From the NCBI RefSeq assembly GCF_021869535.1, contig NW_026262690.1, positions 24,366,001 through 24,430,000 on the forward strand: DNA of 64,000 nucleotides, given 5' to 3'. The notes under the pieces are model-generated. The model did not search any database and was not told the origin of the DNA. It worked only from the letters and a program-made list of their open reading frames with translations. This DNA comes from Mytilus californianus (Eukaryota). Position numbers and translations under genes: made by a program. Shown in pieces: positions 9,038 to 39,400 of the stretch (within the stretch, counting starts at the first letter, position 1; each line of letters begins with the position of its first letter).

Positions 9038-9088
9038 CTGATAAAATGCTCCATTTGCCCCGCAAACTTCTACCACAAGGTTTTCCAT
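9038..9088 (-). CDS. FMR1: Fragile X messenger ribonucleoprotein (FMR1/FXR family) homolog, coding exon 1
   Basis: Translates MENLVVEVCGANGAFYQ, then a phase-0 GTAAAA donor. Matches human FMRP exon 1 (MEELVVEVRGSNGAFYK) in sequence, 17-codon length and intron position. No exon 2 found in 1-9037. Confidence 0.85.
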
Positions 9089-9434
9089 TTTGAACACAGG
9101 GAATGATGGGAAATTTATGTATTTTCCACGCTCTCTTTATATCTTACACAGTCCTGAAGTTAAAATGCAAAAGAATAGAAGTTTGTGGTCGAAACTCATC
9201 AATTCTAATCAAAATTAAACTATAATCTGAACGAAAAAAGTACGGAACATCGACTTTCAGGGAGCATTTCCAGAAATCTAAGTTATTCGGATTGTCTCGG
9301 ATTTTTCCCTTGACTTCTAAATAAACCCCGAGAAAAACTTTTGTACTTCCTTTTTTGGATTATTTTAGCAGAAATGACAACACACAGTTGTTGATATCAG
9401 TAAATAATGTTTTCAGTCCATTCCAGGTGACAAA
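9089..9434. promoter_or_regulatory. Putative shared bidirectional promoter / 5' UTR region between the FMR1-like and WDR44 start codons
   Basis: 346-bp interval between divergent ATGs, locally richer in CpG than the flanks. Transcription starts are not determinable from sequence. Confidence 0.55.
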
Positions 9435-9493
9435 ATGTCGTCCGATAGTGAACTAGAAGAATTTTATGACGCGGAAGAAGCAACACCAAAGCG
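9435..9493 (+). CDS. WDR44: WDR44 exon 1
   Basis: [19 protein letters not shown](R), like human MASESDTEEFYDAPED (FFAT-like). Donor GTATGG, phase 2. Confidence 0.9.
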
Positions 9494-30400: not shown

Positions 30401-33400
30401 TCTGGCCCATTCCAACTGTAGACAGGTTAAAAAGTAAAGGAGGTTCTTTTTCACGAAATTCTTTGATATCTCATATAAGTTTCAGTGAATTCCAAAAAAT
30501 GAAAGCAACACTTTATAATTATATAAAATGTGTCCAAAGCGTTTTTCTGGATCTGCCTTCACCAGGAATGCTCAATGCCAAATAGTTGAAAACCAAGCTG
30601 TACTTTAGAGGGTATAAGTAGGAAATACACAACTTTATGAAGTTCTTAAGATAGCTTTAGATTATAAGTTAGAGGCAACAGTAGTTTTGGTTTATGTTTA
30701 ATTCTCATAAATGAGGGGCCTGATGGGTTATTTTCGTTCTTCGTGATCGGCGCATTTTCGCTATCGTGATCCGTTTTTCTACAGATTTTTTTTTTTTATA
30801 TTTTCGTGATCCGTGATCATGGAAATTTATTTTCTGTGAATCGTGATTGACAAAAAAATCAACTCGTGAATCGTGATGAGACCCCCCCATCAGGCCCCTC
30901 ATAAATCCTTTAAGAAGATATGATGAATAAAGGTAAAAAACTAAAACTGAGGTAAATACATGCCAATAAGAATTAATAAGTTTAAAAATAAGAATTGTCT
31001 GAATTGATTTTTCCAATAGCTTGCAAGAGAATGATTTCTCATTTTGAAAAAAAAATGCTTAACAAAGAATCACTATATAGGAATATAAAAGTTTGCTGAA
31101 GATTCACTAGAAATTGAATAATTTGTTTATCTATCAAAATATAAGAAATATATGTATAAATTTGAATTCACATTACTTATCCTCAATCTCTGATTCTCAT
31201 ATGTATTATTAATGTATTTACTGGATTTCCTATACTGTTGGCATTAAGAAGTAAACATTAATTTTATAGAAGTGTTAATAGTTAAAGTATATTATGTCAT
31301 TTACATAGCAGCATGTTTTTATTTCCTTGGAAAAAATAAACATACATGTAGCTATAGATATCTATAAAGAAACAATATTGTTTCCACAGCTTTCAGACAG
31401 TCCTTCAGAGTGGAGTAATCGTACATCTCTAACTTTACCTACACCTACCTCAACTGTTGATAAATTGACAAGAGATTTAGAATTCACATTAGATCTTCAG
31501 AGTGCCTTAGGTGGTGGACGCCATATCAGAACTGAAGTATGTATAAGTTTTATAATTACTGTGCTAAAGGATTTGGCATCTGTGATTAGTTATTGTCTGA
31601 TGTCTTTAAACATACACATTTTCATCTTTCTAAAACTTGGCCAATATTTAACAAATTTGAAATATGAATGGTGATTGGAAGGTCCTCTACAATCAATCCT
31701 CAGATCAAACACAGCTTGTTATCAATGGTTACTGTCTATCATATTTGTTTTTTGTTTTGTGCATAATTCAGGGCATCAGTTTTCTTGTTTATAAAAAAGA
31801 GATGTGGTATAATTGCAAAACTATCCACCAGAGTTTTAATGAAGTGGATGAAAGCAATTATAGGTCGCTGTACACCCTTCAACAAAGAGAAAAACCCATA
31901 CTGTACAGTCAGATATAAAAGCTATAACATGACAAAATGTGAAACAATTCAAACAAGAAAACTAACAGCCTAGTTTATAACAAAACAATTTATGAAAAAC
32001 AATGTCACTTGTATTTCGATCAATGCTAACGCTCAGTATAAATATATCAACAAATATAATGCCTACCTATGTAATAATGAGTATAGAGGATGGCATGATA
32101 GAATTCTTTCTTAATGTTGTTACAGGTTTGGTTCATTGTGTTATTGTTAATACTGTGGATTTATTTATTTTCATGGGTATAAATTTTGGTGGATTGATGG
32201 AAATTTGATTTCATGGTTTTGCCAAAATGTGCATACAAGACTATAAAAAATCATACTTATATATATCCCACAAATAATACTGAATCCACAGTAAACATAA
32301 AATATGCATGTAGTGGTTAATAGGGGGATTTGGTCATGTCTGCAATTTTGTTATTTCGAGTGATACAGGTTAAAGTGTCATTCAGATAGACAAAACTTCT
32401 CCTTTAGGGTACACTACTTTGAGGGAGACTATGTTGTCAACTTTATCATTTTAAGTCAGTCTTACATCATGATTTCTTTTGTAGGATGTAGATGGACATG
32501 CCATCAACTCAGACAAACCAAGATTCTTTAAGTCAGAAGACAGATTAAAGATTTCATCAGATTCAGAATCATCTCCAAGTTCTAATTTACAGATGTATAG
32601 GCCTCGCTCAAACTCTGGTCGTCTGTTAACAGATCAGGTAACTAATATACAGATGTTTAGACCTGCCTCAAACTCCGGTCATCTGTTGACAGATCAGGTA
32701 ACTAATATACAGATGTTTAAACCTGGCTCAAACTCTGGTTGTCTGTTGACAGATCAGGTAACTAATATACAGATGTATAGGCCTTGCTCAAACTCCGGTC
32801 GTCTGTTGACAGATCAGGTAACTAATACACAGATGTTTAGACCTGGATCAAACTCTGGTTGTCTGTTGACAGATCAGGTAACTAATATACAGATGTTTAG
32901 ACCTGCCTCAAACTCCGGTCATTTGTTGACAGATCAGGTAACTAATATACAGATGTTTAGACCTGGGCAAAACTATGGTAATCTGTTGACAGATCAGGTA
33001 ACTAAGATACAGATGTATAGGCCTTGCTCAAACTTTGGTAATCTGTTGACAGATCAGGTCACTAATATACAGTTGTATAGGCCTGGCTCAAACTCTGGTT
33101 GTCTGTTGACAGATCAGGTAACTAAGATACAGATGTTTAGACCTTGCTCAAACTCTGGTCATCTGTTGACAGATCAGGTAACTAATATACAGATGTTTAA
33201 ACCTGGCTCAAACTCTGGTTGTCTGTTGACAGATCAGGTCACTAATATACAGATGTTGAGACCTGGCTCAAACTCTGGTCATCTGTTGACAGATCAGGTT
33301 ACCAATATACAGATGTTTAGACCTGGCTCAAACTCTGGATTTCTGTTGACAGATCAGGTCATTAATATACAGATGTATAGGCCTGGCTCAAACTCTGGTC

Positions 33401-36400
33401 GTCTGTTGACAGATCAGGTAACTAATATACAGATGTATAGGCCTTGCTCAAACTCTGGTCGTCTGTTGACAGATCAGGTAACTAAGATACAGATGTATAG
33501 GCCTTGCTCAAACTCTGGTTGTCTGTTGACAGATCAGGTCCCTAAAATACAGATGTATAGGTCTTGCTCAAACTCTGGTCGTCTGTTGACAGATCAGGTA
33601 ACTAAGATACAGATGTATAGGCCTTGCTCAAACTCTGGTTGTCTGTTGACAGATCAGGTAACTAATATACAGATGTTTAAACCTGGCTCAAACTCTGGTC
33701 ATCTGTTGACAGATCAGGTAACTAATATACAGATGTTTAGACCTGGCTCAAACTCTGGTCATCTGTTGACAGATCAGGTAACTAATATACAGATGTTTAA
33801 ACCTGGCTCAAACTCTGGTTGTCTGTTGACAGATCAGGTAACTAATATACAGATGTTTAGACCTGCCTCAAACTCCGGTCATCTGTTGACAGATCAGGTA
33901 ACTAATATACAGATGCTTAGACCTGGCTCAAACTCTGGTCATCTGTTGACAGATCAGGTAACTAATATACAGATGTTTAGACCTGGCTCAAACTCCGTCA
34001 TCTGTTGACAGATCAGGTAACTAATATAAAGATGTTTAGACCTGGATCAAACTCTGGTCGTCATGTTGACAGATCAGGTAACTAATATACAGATGTATAG
34101 GCCTTGCTCAAACTCCGGTCGTCTGTTGACAGATCAGGTAACTAATACACAGATGTTTAGACCTGGATCAAACTCTGGTTGTCTGTTGACAGATCAGGTA
34201 ACTTATATACAGATGTTTAGACCTGCCTCAAACTCCGGTCATTTGTTGACAGATCAGGTAACTAATATACAGATGTTTAGACCTGGGGCAAACTTTGGTA
34301 ATCTGTTGACAGATCAGGTCACTAATATACAGTTGTATAGGCCTGGCTCAAACTCTGGTTGTCTGTTGACAGATCAGGTAACTAAGATACAGATGTTTAG
34401 ACCTTGCTCAAACTCTGGTCATCTGTTGACAGATCAGGTAACTAATATACAGATGTTTAAACCTGGCTCAAACTCTGGTTGTCTGTTGACAGATCAGGTC
34501 ACTAATATACAGATGTTGAGACCTGGCTCAAACTCTGGTCATCTGTTGACAGATCAGGTTACCAATATACAGATGTTTAGACCTGGCTCAAACTCTGGAT
34601 TTCTGTTGACAGATCAGGTCATTAATATACAGATGTATAGGCCTGGCTCAAACTCTGGTCATCTGTTGACAGATCAGGTAACTAATATACAGATGTTTAA
34701 ACCTGGCTCAAACTCTGGTTGTCTGTTGACAGATCAGGTCACTAATATACAGATGTTGAGACCTGGCTCAAACTCTGGTTGTCTGTTGACAGATCAGGTC
34801 ACTAATATACAGATGTTGAGACCTGGCTCAAACTCTGGTCATCTGTTGACAGATCAGGTAACTAATATACAGATGTTTAGACCTGGCTCAAACTCCGGTC
34901 ATTTGTTGACAGATCAGGTAACTAATATACAGATGTTGAGACCTGGCTCAAACTCTGGTCATCTGTTGACAGATCAGGTTACCAATATACAGATGTTTAG
35001 ACCTGGCTCAAACTCTGGATTTCTGTTGACAGATCAGGTCATTAATATACAGATGTATAGGCCTGGCTCAAACTCTGGTCATCTGTTGACAGATCAGGTA
35101 ACTAATATACAGATGTTTAAACCTGGCTCAAACTCTGGTTGTCTGTTGACAGATCAGGTCACTAATATACAGATGTTGAGACCTGGCTCAAACTCTGGTT
35201 GTCTGTTGACAGATCAGGTCACTAATATACAGATGTTGAGACCTGGCTCAAACTCTGGTCATCTGTTGACAGATCAGGTTACCAATATACAGATGTTTAG
35301 ACCTGGCTCAAACTCTGGATTTCTGTTGACAGATCAGGTCATTAATATACAGATGTATAGGCCTTGCTCAAACTCTGGTCGTCTGTTGACAGATCAGGTA
35401 ACTAATATACAGATGTATAGGCCTGGCTCAAACTCTGGTTGTCTGTTGCCAGATCAGGTTACTACAATAAGTAGATCAAATGGTTGTAGTATTAGTTTGT
35501 GTCACTGGCATTCAATAGAAAGGGTCACTGGCATTCAATAGAAAGGGTCACTGCCCTTAATCATTTACAGTGTAGGAATTCAAGCTTAATTTTCAAAATG
35601 ATAAAAAAAAAATATATACCTAAATGGTGTTAATAAATAGATACCAAAATACGAAATAACTATTCAAACTGTACTATTCTCTTCCTTTACAGAGATTTAG
35701 AATATCACTAAACATCCACTTTTTTCATTGTTTTAATATTTCCTACTGGTTATCAGTAACAAAGAGCACAAGTGCTATAGCATTAAAACATACTGATTAA
35801 TGTTTGATGTAAGACCCTTTGTCCAACAAACATTACTTTTAACAATTGAAGCTGATGTAAAATGAAATAATCACTCAATTTAAACATTTTGGTCAGCTGA
35901 AGATGAATCCTGGGGAGAATATGGAATGCCTAGAGTGTATAACTCATTAGTCAGTTTCATGTCCAGTGGCAGGATTTAAATGTAAGGACAGTTTTAGAAG
36001 TAATTAGCAAGTGATAACCAAGTATGTACATGCATTACTTACTATATATAACCAAGTATGTATCATCTGATTTTGTCATATCCCCAACATTACATAAATA
36101 AAATTGTTCTTTTAATTGTTTTAGTCTTCCGAAGGGACAGAAAAGATTAAAATTGTTAAGTTCAAGCATAAATTTATATTTGCAATCCTATGATTAACCA
36201 TATTTAACCATTTTCCATAAAAAAATATGACATTATCAGAAATTGGTTTCCTTTTTATGGCAAATTTTATCAAACTGCAAAAAACTTTTGCTCTGCATCC
36301 TTGGCAGTCTGTTTTGTTCAAATTGAACTGTATTTCATAGTATAAAATCCTTCCTTTATTCAAAATTTACGATTTTTAAAAGGCCTGTACGAAATCACCA

Positions 36401-39400
36401 GACATTTGAAGACCTGTCAAAGCAGGGGTTTCCCTAATTTTGGACACACATTACACAAAATCTTACGGGTGAAATCATACATTACGAAGATTTCATGAAA
36501 TTGTTCACATTTATCCGATTATTGGTTTTATGAGTTTACCAAAGTAAAGCTAAAAGTCTTAGGTGCTCAGATTCACTGGACTGCACCGTAACTTCAGATC
36601 ATTTTGAGCATTTTCTACAAAGATATGAGCCCTCAAAGTTTAACCCCCATTAGTATCAATGGAAGTGTTGCAAAAGTTTCTTTAAGTGGTATGCATAGTG
36701 TTAACAAATTATTGTATGTGTTACCTTTACCTTTCTTCACTTATTTTAAATGATACTTGAAATATGTCAACAAAAAAAAAATTATGATTACAGGAAATTC
36801 TAGATGCTGTTATGGTTGTCAACTTGGACACTGGTGAAGAAGTTCCCCTAAGTGTAGCCGAGGATAAGATTCCAAAGGGAATGAATCCATTATCGTTACA
36901 TATAATGAGACTGACGAAGGAATACCGTGATCATGCAGGCGACACAGAGAGCATAGACGATGACATGCATAGTGAAACAATGTCTCTCTCAGAGGAACAA
37001 GGGACAAAGAAAAAAGTGTAAGCTTCTTAGAATTATTAGAATACAAATTTTGTATATAACAATTCATTTATGCTTGATTGTAATCAGAAATAAGAAGATG
37101 TGGTATGAGTGCCAATGAGACAACTCTCCATCCACGTCACAATGTGTAAAAAGTAAACAATTATAGGTCAAAGTACGGCCTTCAACACGGAGCCTTGGCT
37201 CACACCGAACAGCAAGCTATAAAGCAAAATGACTAGTGTAAAACAATTCAAACAGGAAAACAAACGGTCTAATCTATATAAAAAACAAGAAACGAGAAAC
37301 ACTTAAGAACCACATCAACAAACGACAACCACTGAAACAGGCTCCTGACTTAGGACAGGTGCAAACAAATGCAGCGGGTTTAAACGTTTTAACAAGCGCC
37401 AACCTTCACCCTAACCTAAAATAGTAGTGTAACATTACAAATATCAATTGAAATGGCTTAACTCATTCAAACAGACATATTAACAAAAACAAGTAAACAT
37501 ACACTGAACGAATAAATTTGATCTATGACACAATGTCAAAAGACAACTATGACCTTGGACAAAATGGTGTTAAATAAAATAACGTACACAGATAAATTTA
37601 AATATAATAATTTTGTTGTTAGGAGAACAGAGATAATTTTTACAAAATAAATAAATTTGTTGTTCATAGTACGAGAACAGCAGTGAAAATTTATCATCAT
37701 ACTATGGGGTAAATACTTAACATAGGTGGTACATATTAAAAATAGTGAGACGAGATATAAGACAAAATAAGTAAACATTGAATAACAAAAATGCATTACT
37801 AATTGTGTAACAGGTCAAATTAACACGAAAGTACGATTTGAGAGTACTCACAGTTACTGAAAGCTAGTTAAAAGCCAAAAACAATAATAAAAAATCATGC
37901 ATCAGAGACTAAAATCAACTAAAACACATCCCCAGGGATTTAGTGTTTTAATTGTCTATAAACAATGTAGGCTCATCAGTATCTGTTATATTCACAAAAA
38001 AAAAAAATCCCAGTCAAATAAGAAGACGAAAACAAGCCAGGAGGAGATAAATCAACACTAGTTGCCTGAATTTTGAATCCAACTTTTCACAAGATGTATT
38101 TTCCATTTGATAAAATATTGTTATAGTAAGATGATTAGTAAGAGAATTGGCTAAAACTTATGCATTATAATAAATCTTTTTCTAAATTTGTAACTTATCA
38201 GAGCAAGTGGGATTATGTAGACCTTGAAAATTGTATGAGGACTATTCAAGAAATGAATGGGAGCTTGGATGAAAAGCATTTTTAATTTGCCTCACCATGC
38301 ATAAAATTTTAAATTATTGACTTTACAAAACATTTCCTAATATGATTTAAAAGAATTTCCTTTCACCCCTCCTCTTCACTACACTACAGACATTTTTAGA
38401 AAATATCATGATTATATGCTATAAATAAACATCTCATGTTTAATTAAAACTAAATATAACAATGGGATACAGATAAAAATGTTTTTCTTGTTTAAATATA
38501 GGTCTAGATTAAGGAAAATGTTAGGAAAGAAAATAGACCGCACTACCAACAGACTTAAATCAGTAGCAGACCAAGGTGAGGTTTTAAAGTTATGTTAATG
38601 ATTTAATGGAAGAAAAAGTAAAGAATGAAAGCCTTAAAACAAGTAAATCATAGTTATGTTGACTGATTTTTGGTTGCTTTACCATCAGTTTTATAGAAAA
38701 AAAATCTTGTTATATTTTGAGAAAAAAATGTTCACTGGTTGAATAATCGATTCGAACACATATTCTAATTTTTTATGGATTAGATTGGAAGGATAAAGTA
38801 CTTTGAAAAATAGATATGATACGATGAATTCCTACACACTGGAAATAGTGTTGATAAATTTTTGATTTTGGACATAATTTAGTGCATTTTATAACTAATA
38901 AAGATTATTTTTACTGATTTAATTGATGTTTAAACTCATTTTTTCACTTGGTAGCTTAACTTAAAGGCTGAAATATAAAGTCCTTCCAACTTCAGTTTGT
39001 GAGTGAGTTGGTTGAGTTTTCACACAAATTAACTTCTTCAAAATATTAACCTGTAAGACTCAAATAACAATATCATACATTCGTTATTTATTGTTTAATG
39101 CTTAACATCCATGTGACAATATGTTTTTTGAGACATTACCTAATTTTATACATTTAACTTTGTAGTATTGCACATGGAAGAAACTGCAGTTGAACAGGAA
39201 ATAATTTTTGATGGTAAAATGTTCAAGGTTAGTGTTTAATGATGAAACTGGTAGACAACATGATCACAAATACTTGACTTTTTAAAAATTGATATCAAAT
39301 ATTGATTAGATAATATATGCACACACTACTACAAGTAAATATGCATTAAATTTAATTCAGTCATTCCTAGCTATCCATGTACTTGCTTAATTTGGCAAGA

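What the first reader, a model, noticed from the sequence alone, without database searches (positions are those of the whole stretch)
32582..35461. A WDR44 exon end and its splice donor are amplified 48-fold: a ladder of alternative 5' splice sites
Seen: the 60-bp unit is the last 56 nt of exon 7 plus GTAA. All 48 copies keep CAG|GT; 30 read GTAACT exactly like the first donor. The unit is 20 codons, so donor n adds (n-1) x 20 aa ([20 protein letters not shown]-like) in frame with exon 8. This holds through unit 23, before the indel pair in units 24-25. Known: the amplified peptide is the conserved [12 protein letters not shown] segment at the start of the Rab11-binding region. Its serines are reported Akt/SGK-type phosphosites in mammalian WDR44. 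Inferred: either donor choice yields WDR44 isoforms with tunable repeat length at the regulatory site, or the cell suppresses 47 near-identical decoy donors. Either would be an unusual system.
Basis: partly seen in the sequence, partly recalled or inferred. Interest (0 to 1): 0.9.

Follow-up and report, generated by a model that had tools for sequence, protein, structure and literature searches.

The report
Splice-donor minisatellite in mussel WDR44 intron
In the California mussel, the end of a WDR44 coding exon and its splice donor have been copied 48 times in tandem, but the available RNA shows only the first donor in use, so this is a large new example of a known kind of silent intronic "mirage" minisatellite rather than a ladder of protein isoforms.

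Summary
At 32582-35461 there are 48 tandem 60-bp units, each made of the last 56 nt of WDR44 exon 7 plus GTAA. All 48 keep CAG|GT, 30 have the authentic 9-mer, and the reading frame stays open through donor 23.

The window is Mytilus californianus (HiFi assembly). RNA does not support the "ladder" reading. Two RNA-seq assemblies and one raw read join only the first donor (32637) to exon 8 (36794), and RNA depth across the array is zero. Depth is low, so minor isoforms are not excluded.

The copies evolve neutrally:
- The ratio of synonymous to non-synonymous changes is as expected by chance.
- CpG sites have decayed.
- There is a frameshift in units 24-25.
- The RxRxxS kinase consensus survives only in the exon copy (0 of 47 others).

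M. edulis, M. galloprovincialis and M. trossulus have just one degenerate second copy. The duplication is therefore old, and the expansion happened in the californianus/coruscus lineage.

This kind of array is already described: human F7 IVS7, IFI6, CBS, LMNB2 and PDGF, and the amphioxus "mirages". In those, the most upstream donor is chosen. The scan has noted at least four similar arrays elsewhere in this genome.

Verdict: a new member of a known kind, of modest interest.

The parts
31374..31536 (+). WDR44 exon 6 (at least its 3' part), spliced to exon 7
   Evidence: GT..AG joint 31536->32485 in the X1 RNA contig and in 2 X21 reads; tblastn match to oyster WDR44.
32485..32637 (+). WDR44 exon 7 (51 codons, phase 0), ending in [13 protein letters not shown]. 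Its last 56 nt form unit 1 of the array.
   Evidence: Translation; 100% identical to the exon-7 peptide of the M. californianus WDR44 protein P0255; RNA contig covers it with 0 mismatches.
32638..32643 (+). Authentic 5' splice site GTAACT (9-mer CAG|GTAACT, 8 of 9 matches to CAG|GTAAGT). It is the only donor seen in RNA.
   Evidence: Joint 32634->36791 '(cut +3)', i.e. 32637|36794, GT..AG, in the X1 contig (2185 nt), the X2 contig (320 nt) and 1 X21 read.
32582..35461 (+). The 48-unit, 60-bp minisatellite. Unit 1 is exonic plus GTAA; units 2-48 are intronic.
   Evidence: TRF; unit table; 31 distinct unit types with higher-order blocks, units 33-38~40-45 and 9-14~30-35 at 1 mismatch each.
32638..33957 (+). 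Units 2-23: an open read-through frame. It holds 22 decoy donors that would add 20-440 aa in frame; 17 of the 22 have the authentic 9-mer.
33958..34077 (+). Units 24 (59 nt, 1-nt deletion) and 25 (61 nt, 1-nt insertion). The in-frame TGA at 34006-34008 puts a premature stop in any mRNA that uses donors 24-48.
35458..35463 (+). Last decoy donor (GTTACT). The sequence after it is collinear with the flank of the single degenerate second copy in M. trossulus.
   Evidence: Alignment A1.
35462..36793 (+). Unique remainder of intron 7. It includes a perfect 23-bp x2.3 tandem repeat at 35501-35553 and a moderately repeated element at about 36101-36700.
36794..37019 (+). WDR44 exon 8 ([20 protein letters not shown]...), the core of the Rab11-binding domain.

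Best explanation
This is a 'mirage'-type intronic minisatellite in the WDR44 gene of Mytilus californianus.

Origin: a 60-bp tandem duplication spanning the exon 7 / intron 7 boundary arose before the Mytilus species split. The boundaries share a CTA(A) microhomology. The extra copy decayed in the M. edulis complex. In the californianus/coruscus lineage it stayed intact and expanded, by unequal exchange or slippage of multi-unit blocks, to 48 units.

Current state: the 47 intronic copies evolve as neutral DNA and are removed with intron 7. The spliceosome commits to the first donor downstream of the exon-7 acceptor, through exon definition or 5'->3' oriented scanning, as was shown experimentally for the human F7 IVS7 minisatellite. 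The downstream donors are therefore silent although 29 of them match the authentic 9-mer.

Shown here: the structure, the first-donor usage in the sampled RNA, the neutral substitution pattern, and the distribution across species. Inferred: the mechanism of donor choice and the mechanism of expansion.
For: Structure.

RNA:
- Contigs from two RNA runs and one raw read join 32637 to 36794.
- The X1 contig matches unit 1, including its diagnostic bases, with 0 mismatches.
- RNA depth is 0 across 32701-36100 in three RNA runs, against 5-6 on exons 6-8 in X1.

Annotation: the M. californianus protein in the databases is the single 999-aa canonical form and carries no isoform label.

Neutral evolution:
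- 33 distinct variants, 9 synonymous to 23 non-synonymous, against 43:131 possible. The other two frames give the same ratio.
- P(no stop by chance) = 0.29.
- A frameshift with a stop at 34006.
- RxRxxS is retained in 0 of 47 copies, and the exon's two CpGs have mostly become TG/CA.

The array is real:
- The assembly is 45x HiFi with read N50 of 14 kb.
- A DNA contig from an independent individual runs into the array and stops there, and array words are present at low depth, so this is not a genome-wide satellite.

Evolution:
- M. galloprovincialis, M. edulis and M. trossulus have the exon copy plus one degenerate copy without a donor.
- That copy keeps the TATAGG state seen in the M. californianus exon.
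- M. coruscus gene models contain 3 and about 12 extra units.

Precedent for the mechanism: PMC1557585.
Against: RNA sampling is thin: the raw run X21 gave depth of about 1.7 on exon 7 and one junction read. Logan contigs drop rare variants, so use of decoy donors at roughly <20% is not excluded.

In human IFI6 and CBS the first two pseudo-sites are used constitutively, so some use of donors 2-3 would not be surprising.

Two annotated M. coruscus isoforms (P0258 1054 aa, P0257 1231 aa) include repeat units. They come from BRAKER, and P0257 needs odd GT..AG jumps inside units, but they could reflect real RNA-seq hints.

Ten consecutive invariant columns around the donor could hint at constraint. 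However, the number of independent mutations is small, and the +3 donor position is among the most variable.
Confidence: 0.8

Rival explanations
1. Ladder of alternative 5' splice sites. Downstream donors 2-23, and possibly the internal acceptor-like tatacag|ATG, are used in some tissues or conditions. This would give WDR44 isoforms with 15/20-aa modules inserted between the SGK/Akt site and the Rab11-binding domain.
For: - The frame is open through donor 23, and 17 of 22 of those donors have the authentic 9-mer.
- M. coruscus isoforms P0257/P0258 contain such modules, including a 15-aa module that lacks VTNIQ.
- IFI6 and CBS use their first pseudo-sites.
Against: - Only the first donor appears in RNA contigs and reads, and RNA depth over the array is zero.
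- No database protein of 72-227, 279-887 or 560-1780 aa from M. californianus carries extra units.
- All 47 copies lack the -3 Arg of RxRxxS.
- The substitution pattern is neutral and there is a mid-array frameshift.
- The M. coruscus models are BRAKER predictions.
Confidence: 0.12
2. The array is a functional intronic cis-element, for example a cluster of U1 snRNP binding sites. It would boost use of the upstream donor or inclusion of exon 7, or suppress premature cleavage and polyadenylation.
For: There are 30 good U1-complementary sites in 2.9 kb. The stretch around CAG|GT is the least variable part of the unit.
Against: - No such array exists in three other Mytilus species, which splice the same exon normally.
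- The donor +3 position is degraded in 18 units.
- Nothing here tests U1 binding.
Confidence: 0.06
3. Assembly artefact: the array is over-expanded or mis-assembled.
For: Only one assembly was examined. The short-read DNA contigs cannot span the array.
Against: - HiFi reads at 45x with N50 of 14 kb span 2.9 kb easily.
- There are 31 distinct unit types in an ordered higher-order pattern.
- An independent individual has array words, and its contig breaks at the array edge.
- M. coruscus also has an array.
Confidence: 0.02

Closest known systems
Human F7 intron 7 minisatellite (37 bp, 5-9 copies; Borensztajn et al. 2006, PMC1557585)
   Same: The first monomer spans the exon-intron boundary. The authentic donor is followed by identical pseudo-donors that stay silent, and only the most upstream site is used.
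   Different: - The F7 unit holds only 4 exonic nt, against 56 of 60 here.
- It has 5-9 copies, against 48.
- The F7 pseudo-sites were shown by mutagenesis to be functional; that was not tested here.
- It is in a mammal, not a mollusc.
Human IFI6 (6-16) intron 2 and CBS intron 13 minisatellites (cited in PMC1557585)
   Same: Reiterated donors: 25 pseudo-sites in IFI6, and 15-20 repeats in CBS.
   Different: In those genes the first two pseudo-sites are also used constitutively. Here no use of any pseudo-site was seen, though the sampling was thin.
Human LMNB2 (100-bp monomer) and PDGF intron 4 (81-bp monomer) boundary minisatellites (cited in PMC1557585)
   Same: Long units spanning the boundary, 10-18 repeats, and only the authentic donor used.
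   Different: Fewer copies. Those cases are not described as amplifying a regulatory phosphosite motif.
Amphioxus 'mirages' (Adh3, globins; PMC3087553)
   Same: Minisatellite-like tandem duplications of exon-intron boundaries in a highly heterozygous marine invertebrate. They do not disturb normal splicing, and they show length instability and concerted evolution.
   Different: The amphioxus arrays reported are short (about 3-6 units of 150-160 bp in the globins). Here there are 48 units of 60 bp, and a cross-species series shows a two-copy stage and expanded stages.

Membership tests
Exon-intron boundary ('mirage' / F7-IVS7-type) minisatellite | Tandem array whose first monomer spans an exon-intron boundary | tested here: met
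   Unit 1 is 32582-32641: 56 nt of exon 7 plus GTAA. The exon boundary is confirmed by RNA joints.
Exon-intron boundary ('mirage' / F7-IVS7-type) minisatellite | The authentic splice-site sequence is reiterated in the adjoining intron | tested here: met
   48 of 48 units keep CAG|GT; 30 of 48 have CAG|GTAACT.
Exon-intron boundary ('mirage' / F7-IVS7-type) minisatellite | Normal splicing persists: the authentic, most upstream donor is the one used | tested here: met
   Only 32637|36794 is seen in X1, X2 and X21, with no RNA over the array. Depth is low, so minor use of other donors is not excluded.
Exon-intron boundary ('mirage' / F7-IVS7-type) minisatellite | Pseudo-sites are intrinsically functional (activated when upstream sites are mutated) | not testable with these tools
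   This needs a minigene mutagenesis experiment.
Exon-intron boundary ('mirage' / F7-IVS7-type) minisatellite | Length polymorphism or instability of the array | tested here: inconclusive
   Multi-unit blocks with 1 mismatch in 360 nt imply very recent turnover. Copy number differs between species. No population or haplotype lengths could be obtained.
Alternative 5' splice-site ladder producing isoforms (IFI6 6-16 type) | mRNAs that use the reiterated donors are detectable | tested here: not met
   No such junction, contig or protein was found for M. californianus. Only BRAKER models in M. coruscus contain extra units.
WDR44 (Rab11BP / rabphilin-11) orthologue | N-terminal acidic EFYDAE motif, RPRSNSGR site followed by the Rab11-binding segment, and C-terminal WD40 propeller, collinear with annotated WDR44 | tested here: met
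   tblastn of oyster WDR44 maps exons from 9435 to 52905 on the + strand. The locus is identical to the one encoding the M. californianus WDR44-like protein P0255. WD40 Pfam families are on record for it.

The most novel reading that the evidence does not exclude
Downstream donors, and the weak internal acceptors, are used at low level or conditionally in the californianus/coruscus lineage. On this reading the M. coruscus 1054- and 1231-aa models reflect real mRNAs. Array length, which is probably polymorphic, would then set a family of WDR44 isoforms in which a spacer of 15/20-aa modules separates the SGK/Akt phosphosite from the Rab11-binding domain. That would be a copy-number-variable modulator of Rab11 effector switching.
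Probability: 0.1. Interest if true: 0.55.

Novelty: new member of a known kind. Interest (0 to 1): 0.3.

Why it matters
It is a very large natural test of how the spliceosome picks one 5' splice site among many identical ones: 29 decoys share the authentic 9-mer, and 22 decoys would keep the reading frame. It extends to a protostome the "most upstream site wins" rule that was worked out on the human F7 gene.

The series across Mytilus species shows the stages of such an array's history:
- two copies, the second decayed, in the M. edulis complex;
- at least about 12 units in M. coruscus;
- 48 units in M. californianus.

Together with at least four similar arrays noted elsewhere in this genome, it suggests that mussels, like amphioxus, are rich in these boundary minisatellites.

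There is also a practical point. Such arrays mislead gene predictors, as the two inflated M. coruscus WDR44 models show.

Tried and rejected
- Protein search with the 507-aa read-through ORF: no hit at 279-887 aa.
- Protein search with the segment of three repeat modules (15+20+20 aa) plus exon 8 from P0258: only exon-8-only fragments came back, and none joined units to exon 8.
- The look-up of encoding contigs for the M. coruscus isoforms P0257 and P0258: not on record, so the M. coruscus genomic array could not be read. Only a canonical RNA contig (L001) was obtained.
- Test for coding constraint: the syn/non-syn ratio equals the neutral expectation, and the absence of stops is not significant (P = 0.29). 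The open frame is inherited from the exon and from the 60 = 3x20 period.
- My own idea that each unit is a 45-nt cassette micro-exon (tatacag|ATG...CAG|gt): the spacer is only 15 nt, with no polypyrimidine tract, and no such joint is seen in RNA. It appears only in the BRAKER model P0258.
- DNA copy number from short-read contigs: not determinable, because word depth is no copy number and the bins have holes.
- One paper search failed on syntax.
Full report
**1. What is in the sequence**

The region 32582-35464 is a 60-bp tandem array of 48.0 copies, with 90% matches and a TRF score of 4518.

The frame-1 translation of 32485-32637 reads [51 protein letters not shown] and is followed by GTAACT. 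The unit is the last 56 nt of this exon plus GTAA.

There are 48 CAG|GT sites exactly 60 nt apart. The only exception is a 59/61 pair at units 24/25. The donor hexamers are GTAACT x30, GTCACT x8, GTTACC x4, GTCATT x4, GTCCCT x1 and GTTACT x1. As 9-mers, 30 equal the authentic CAG|GTAACT, which has 8 of 9 matches to CAG|GTAAGT: 17 of donors 2-23 and 12 of donors 24-48.

Read-through from the exon stays open to a TGA at 34006, just after the 1-nt deletion in unit 24. Only unit 1 carries CCTCGC, TTAACA and AATTTA.

**2. Gene and organism**

A phmmer search with exon 8 finds WDR44 orthologues. tblastn of the oyster protein maps the whole gene on the + strand, from 9435 to 52905.

The exon-7 peptide is identical to the M. 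californianus WDR44-like protein P0255. The locus fetched for that protein (GCA_021869535.1, JAKFGE010000004.1) is identical to window 8435-53923.

The assembly was made from 45x PacBio HiFi with a read N50 of 14 kb (PMC9710001). A 2.9-kb array is therefore well within single reads.

- The Rab11-binding domain of human WDR44 starts at residues 334/340.
- S342/S344 in RPRSNSG are Akt/SGK3 sites (PMC9808001).

**3. RNA evidence**

Exon 6 (31374-31536) joins exon 7 at 32485. Exon 7 joins exon 8 through a GT..AG joint reported as 32634->36791 '(cut +3)', that is 32637|36794. Three sources show this junction:
- a 2185-nt RNA contig of run X1, which has 0 mismatches over 32485-32634 and so includes the unit-1 diagnostic bases;
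- a 320-nt contig of run X2;
- one raw read of X21.

RNA depth over 32701-36100 is zero in all three RNA runs, while the exons in X1 have word depth of about 5-6. No joint from any other donor was listed, and none into an internal acceptor.

The limits of this evidence are real. X21 was sampled at about 6% and gives depth of only about 1.7 on exon 7. Assembled contigs drop rare variants. The first donor is therefore clearly the major one, but use of decoys below roughly a fifth is not excluded.

In the DNA run X26, from another study, a contig runs 32199-32649 and stops at the array edge. Array bins have word depths of 0-33 against 6-9 in the flanks. The array words therefore exist in another individual, and the unit is not a genome-wide satellite. 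By contrast, the repeat at 31701-32300 reaches a depth of up to 35,690.

**4. Databases**

- The 507-aa read-through ORF finds no protein of 279-887 aa.
- A query made of three repeat modules plus exon 8 finds only exon-8 fragments among proteins of 72-227 aa.
- Among full-length relatives (560-1780 aa), M. californianus, M. trossulus, M. galloprovincialis and M. edulis each have one 999-aa form with a single [13 protein letters not shown]|EILDAV junction.

M. coruscus is the exception. It has three forms:
- the 999-aa form, which is also found in an RNA contig, L001;
- P0258, 1054 aa, with +15+20+20 aa;
- P0257, 1231 aa, with about 12 extra units.

These models come from BRAKER, which combines ab initio prediction with RNA-seq hints (PMC7227121). 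P0257 contains two SNSGH|QVTDIQ junctions, one of them inside exon 7 itself. Judged from the M. californianus unit, these correspond to removing a GT...AG stretch of 12+60k nt (C|GTCTGTTGACAG|AT). That is how a gene finder bridges a broken frame, and it is not a plausible splice. This last step is my inference, since the M. coruscus DNA could not be fetched.

I therefore take these models as proof that M. coruscus has an array. I do not take them as proof that it is spliced into mRNA.

**5. Is there selection on the copies?**

- Among the 45 full-length read-through units there are 33 distinct variants: 9 synonymous, 23 non-synonymous and one 'stop-type' change. The stop-type change occurs only together with a second change, giving CAA.
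- The possible changes are 43 synonymous, 131 non-synonymous and 6 stop-creating. The two other frames give the same ratios.
- The chance of seeing no stop is 0.29.
- The open frame is thus inherited from the exon plus the 1-in-3 chance that the period is a multiple of three.
- The RxRxxS consensus for Akt/SGK survives only in unit 1. Codon 10 is GGC, TGC, GCC, GGA or GGG in all 47 copies.
- The two exon CpGs have mostly decayed. At the second site, CG survives in 7 units, against 17 CA and 15 TG. At the first site, CG survives in 1 unit, against 10 TG.
- The donor +3 base is among the most variable positions: A30/C13/T5.
- The ten invariant columns around CAG|GT are suggestive at most, because variation is spread by block duplication and independent events are few.

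**6. History**

The array has 31 unit types arranged in higher-order blocks:
- units 33-38 ~ 40-45 and units 9-14 ~ 30-35, each with 1 mismatch in 360 nt;
- units 4-6 ~ 26-28.

This is far below the species' 2.7% heterozygosity. Turnover is therefore recent, and length polymorphism is likely (inference).

M. galloprovincialis (L002), M. edulis (L003) and M. trossulus (L004) have no array. Each has the exon copy followed by one degenerate second copy, 63-67% identical to its own exon copy, without a donor. In M. trossulus the donor position reads GATCTGAC; in the other two it is truncated by a deletion.

In M. trossulus the sequence after the second copy is collinear with the sequence after unit 48 in the window. 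The second copies keep the TATAGG state of the M. californianus exon, whereas the edulis-complex exons now read TATCGA. Intron identity between the lineages is 72-83%.

The 60-bp duplication therefore predates the split of these lineages. The expansion is specific to the californianus/coruscus side. Both unit boundaries start with CTA(A), in the exon (tCTAATTT) and in the intron after GTAA (CTACAAT). This fits an origin by slippage at a microhomology (inference).

**7. Mechanism**

The best-supported explanation is that the array is simply part of intron 7. The first donor after the exon-7 acceptor is committed, through exon definition or 5'->3' oriented scanning.

For the human F7 IVS7 minisatellite, 50 constructs showed three things (PMC1557585):
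- the identical pseudo-sites are functional;
- they never compete with the most upstream one;
- the next one takes over when the upstream site is mutated.

That paper also lists IFI6 6-16 (25 pseudo-sites, the first two also used), CBS, LMNB2 and PDGF. In amphioxus such arrays are called 'mirages' and do not disturb splicing (PMC3087553).

Any mRNA made from donors 24-48 would carry the 34006 stop and should be degraded by NMD (established knowledge). Products of donors 2-23 would be stable, yet none was seen.

**8. Comparison and novelty**

This is a new member of a known kind. It has several particular features:
- 48 units, compared with up to 26 reiterated donors (IFI6, the authentic site plus 25 pseudo-sites) among the human cases listed in PMC1557585;
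- a unit that is 93% coding sequence and exactly 20 codons;
- amplification of a conserved kinase-site motif, whose consensus is nonetheless lost in all copies;
- a cross-species series from two copies to 48.

The scan's own notes list at least four further boundary minisatellites in this same genome: s1-312151, s1-302664, s1-342944 and s1-282082. I did not check them. The 'mirage' term came from the first of these notes, and I verified it in the literature.

**9. Verdict**

The 'tunable isoform' half is not supported, though it is not excluded at low level.
- The kind is already known.
- Interest is 0.3.

Noticed in passing
window:31701-32300 (intron 6): A very high-copy interspersed repeat. 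DNA word depth reaches 35,690, against about 6 in the flanks. It is also present in RNA runs, with many loose ends, so it is probably a transcribed transposable element.
   Followed up: no
window:36101-36700 (intron 7): A moderately repeated element, with DNA word depth of about 185-345 against about 6-10 in the flanks.
   Followed up: no
window:35462-35600: A segment of about 140 nt just after the array, containing a perfect 23-bp x2.3 tandem repeat (35501-35553). It is present in M. californianus and, with one copy, in M. trossulus. It is deleted in M. galloprovincialis and M. edulis.
   Followed up: partly
P0257 and P0258 (M. coruscus WDR44 models); no DNA locus available: Two BRAKER gene models of 1231 and 1054 aa incorporate minisatellite units into WDR44. 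P0257 needs GT..AG jumps inside units, one of them inside exon 7. These are probably annotation artefacts caused by the open frame of the array.
   Followed up: partly
L002-L005:1-654 (minus strand); window about 9038-9493: An FMR1/FXR-like gene (Tudor_FRX1 and KH domains) lies head-to-head just upstream of WDR44 in all four Mytilus genomes fetched. The arrangement is therefore conserved across the genus.
   Followed up: partly
L002:5000-5661 (M. galloprovincialis WDR44 intron): An unrelated 47-bp x14 minisatellite (92% matches) in an early intron of the M. galloprovincialis gene.
   Followed up: no
window:32596-32601 vs L002:17927-17932, L003:15857-15862 and L004:20069-20074: The first Arg codon of RPRSNS is AGG in M. 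californianus and CGA in the three edulis-complex species. The degenerate second copies of the edulis complex keep the AGG-type sequence, so they act as a small 'fossil' of the ancestral exon state.
   Followed up: partly
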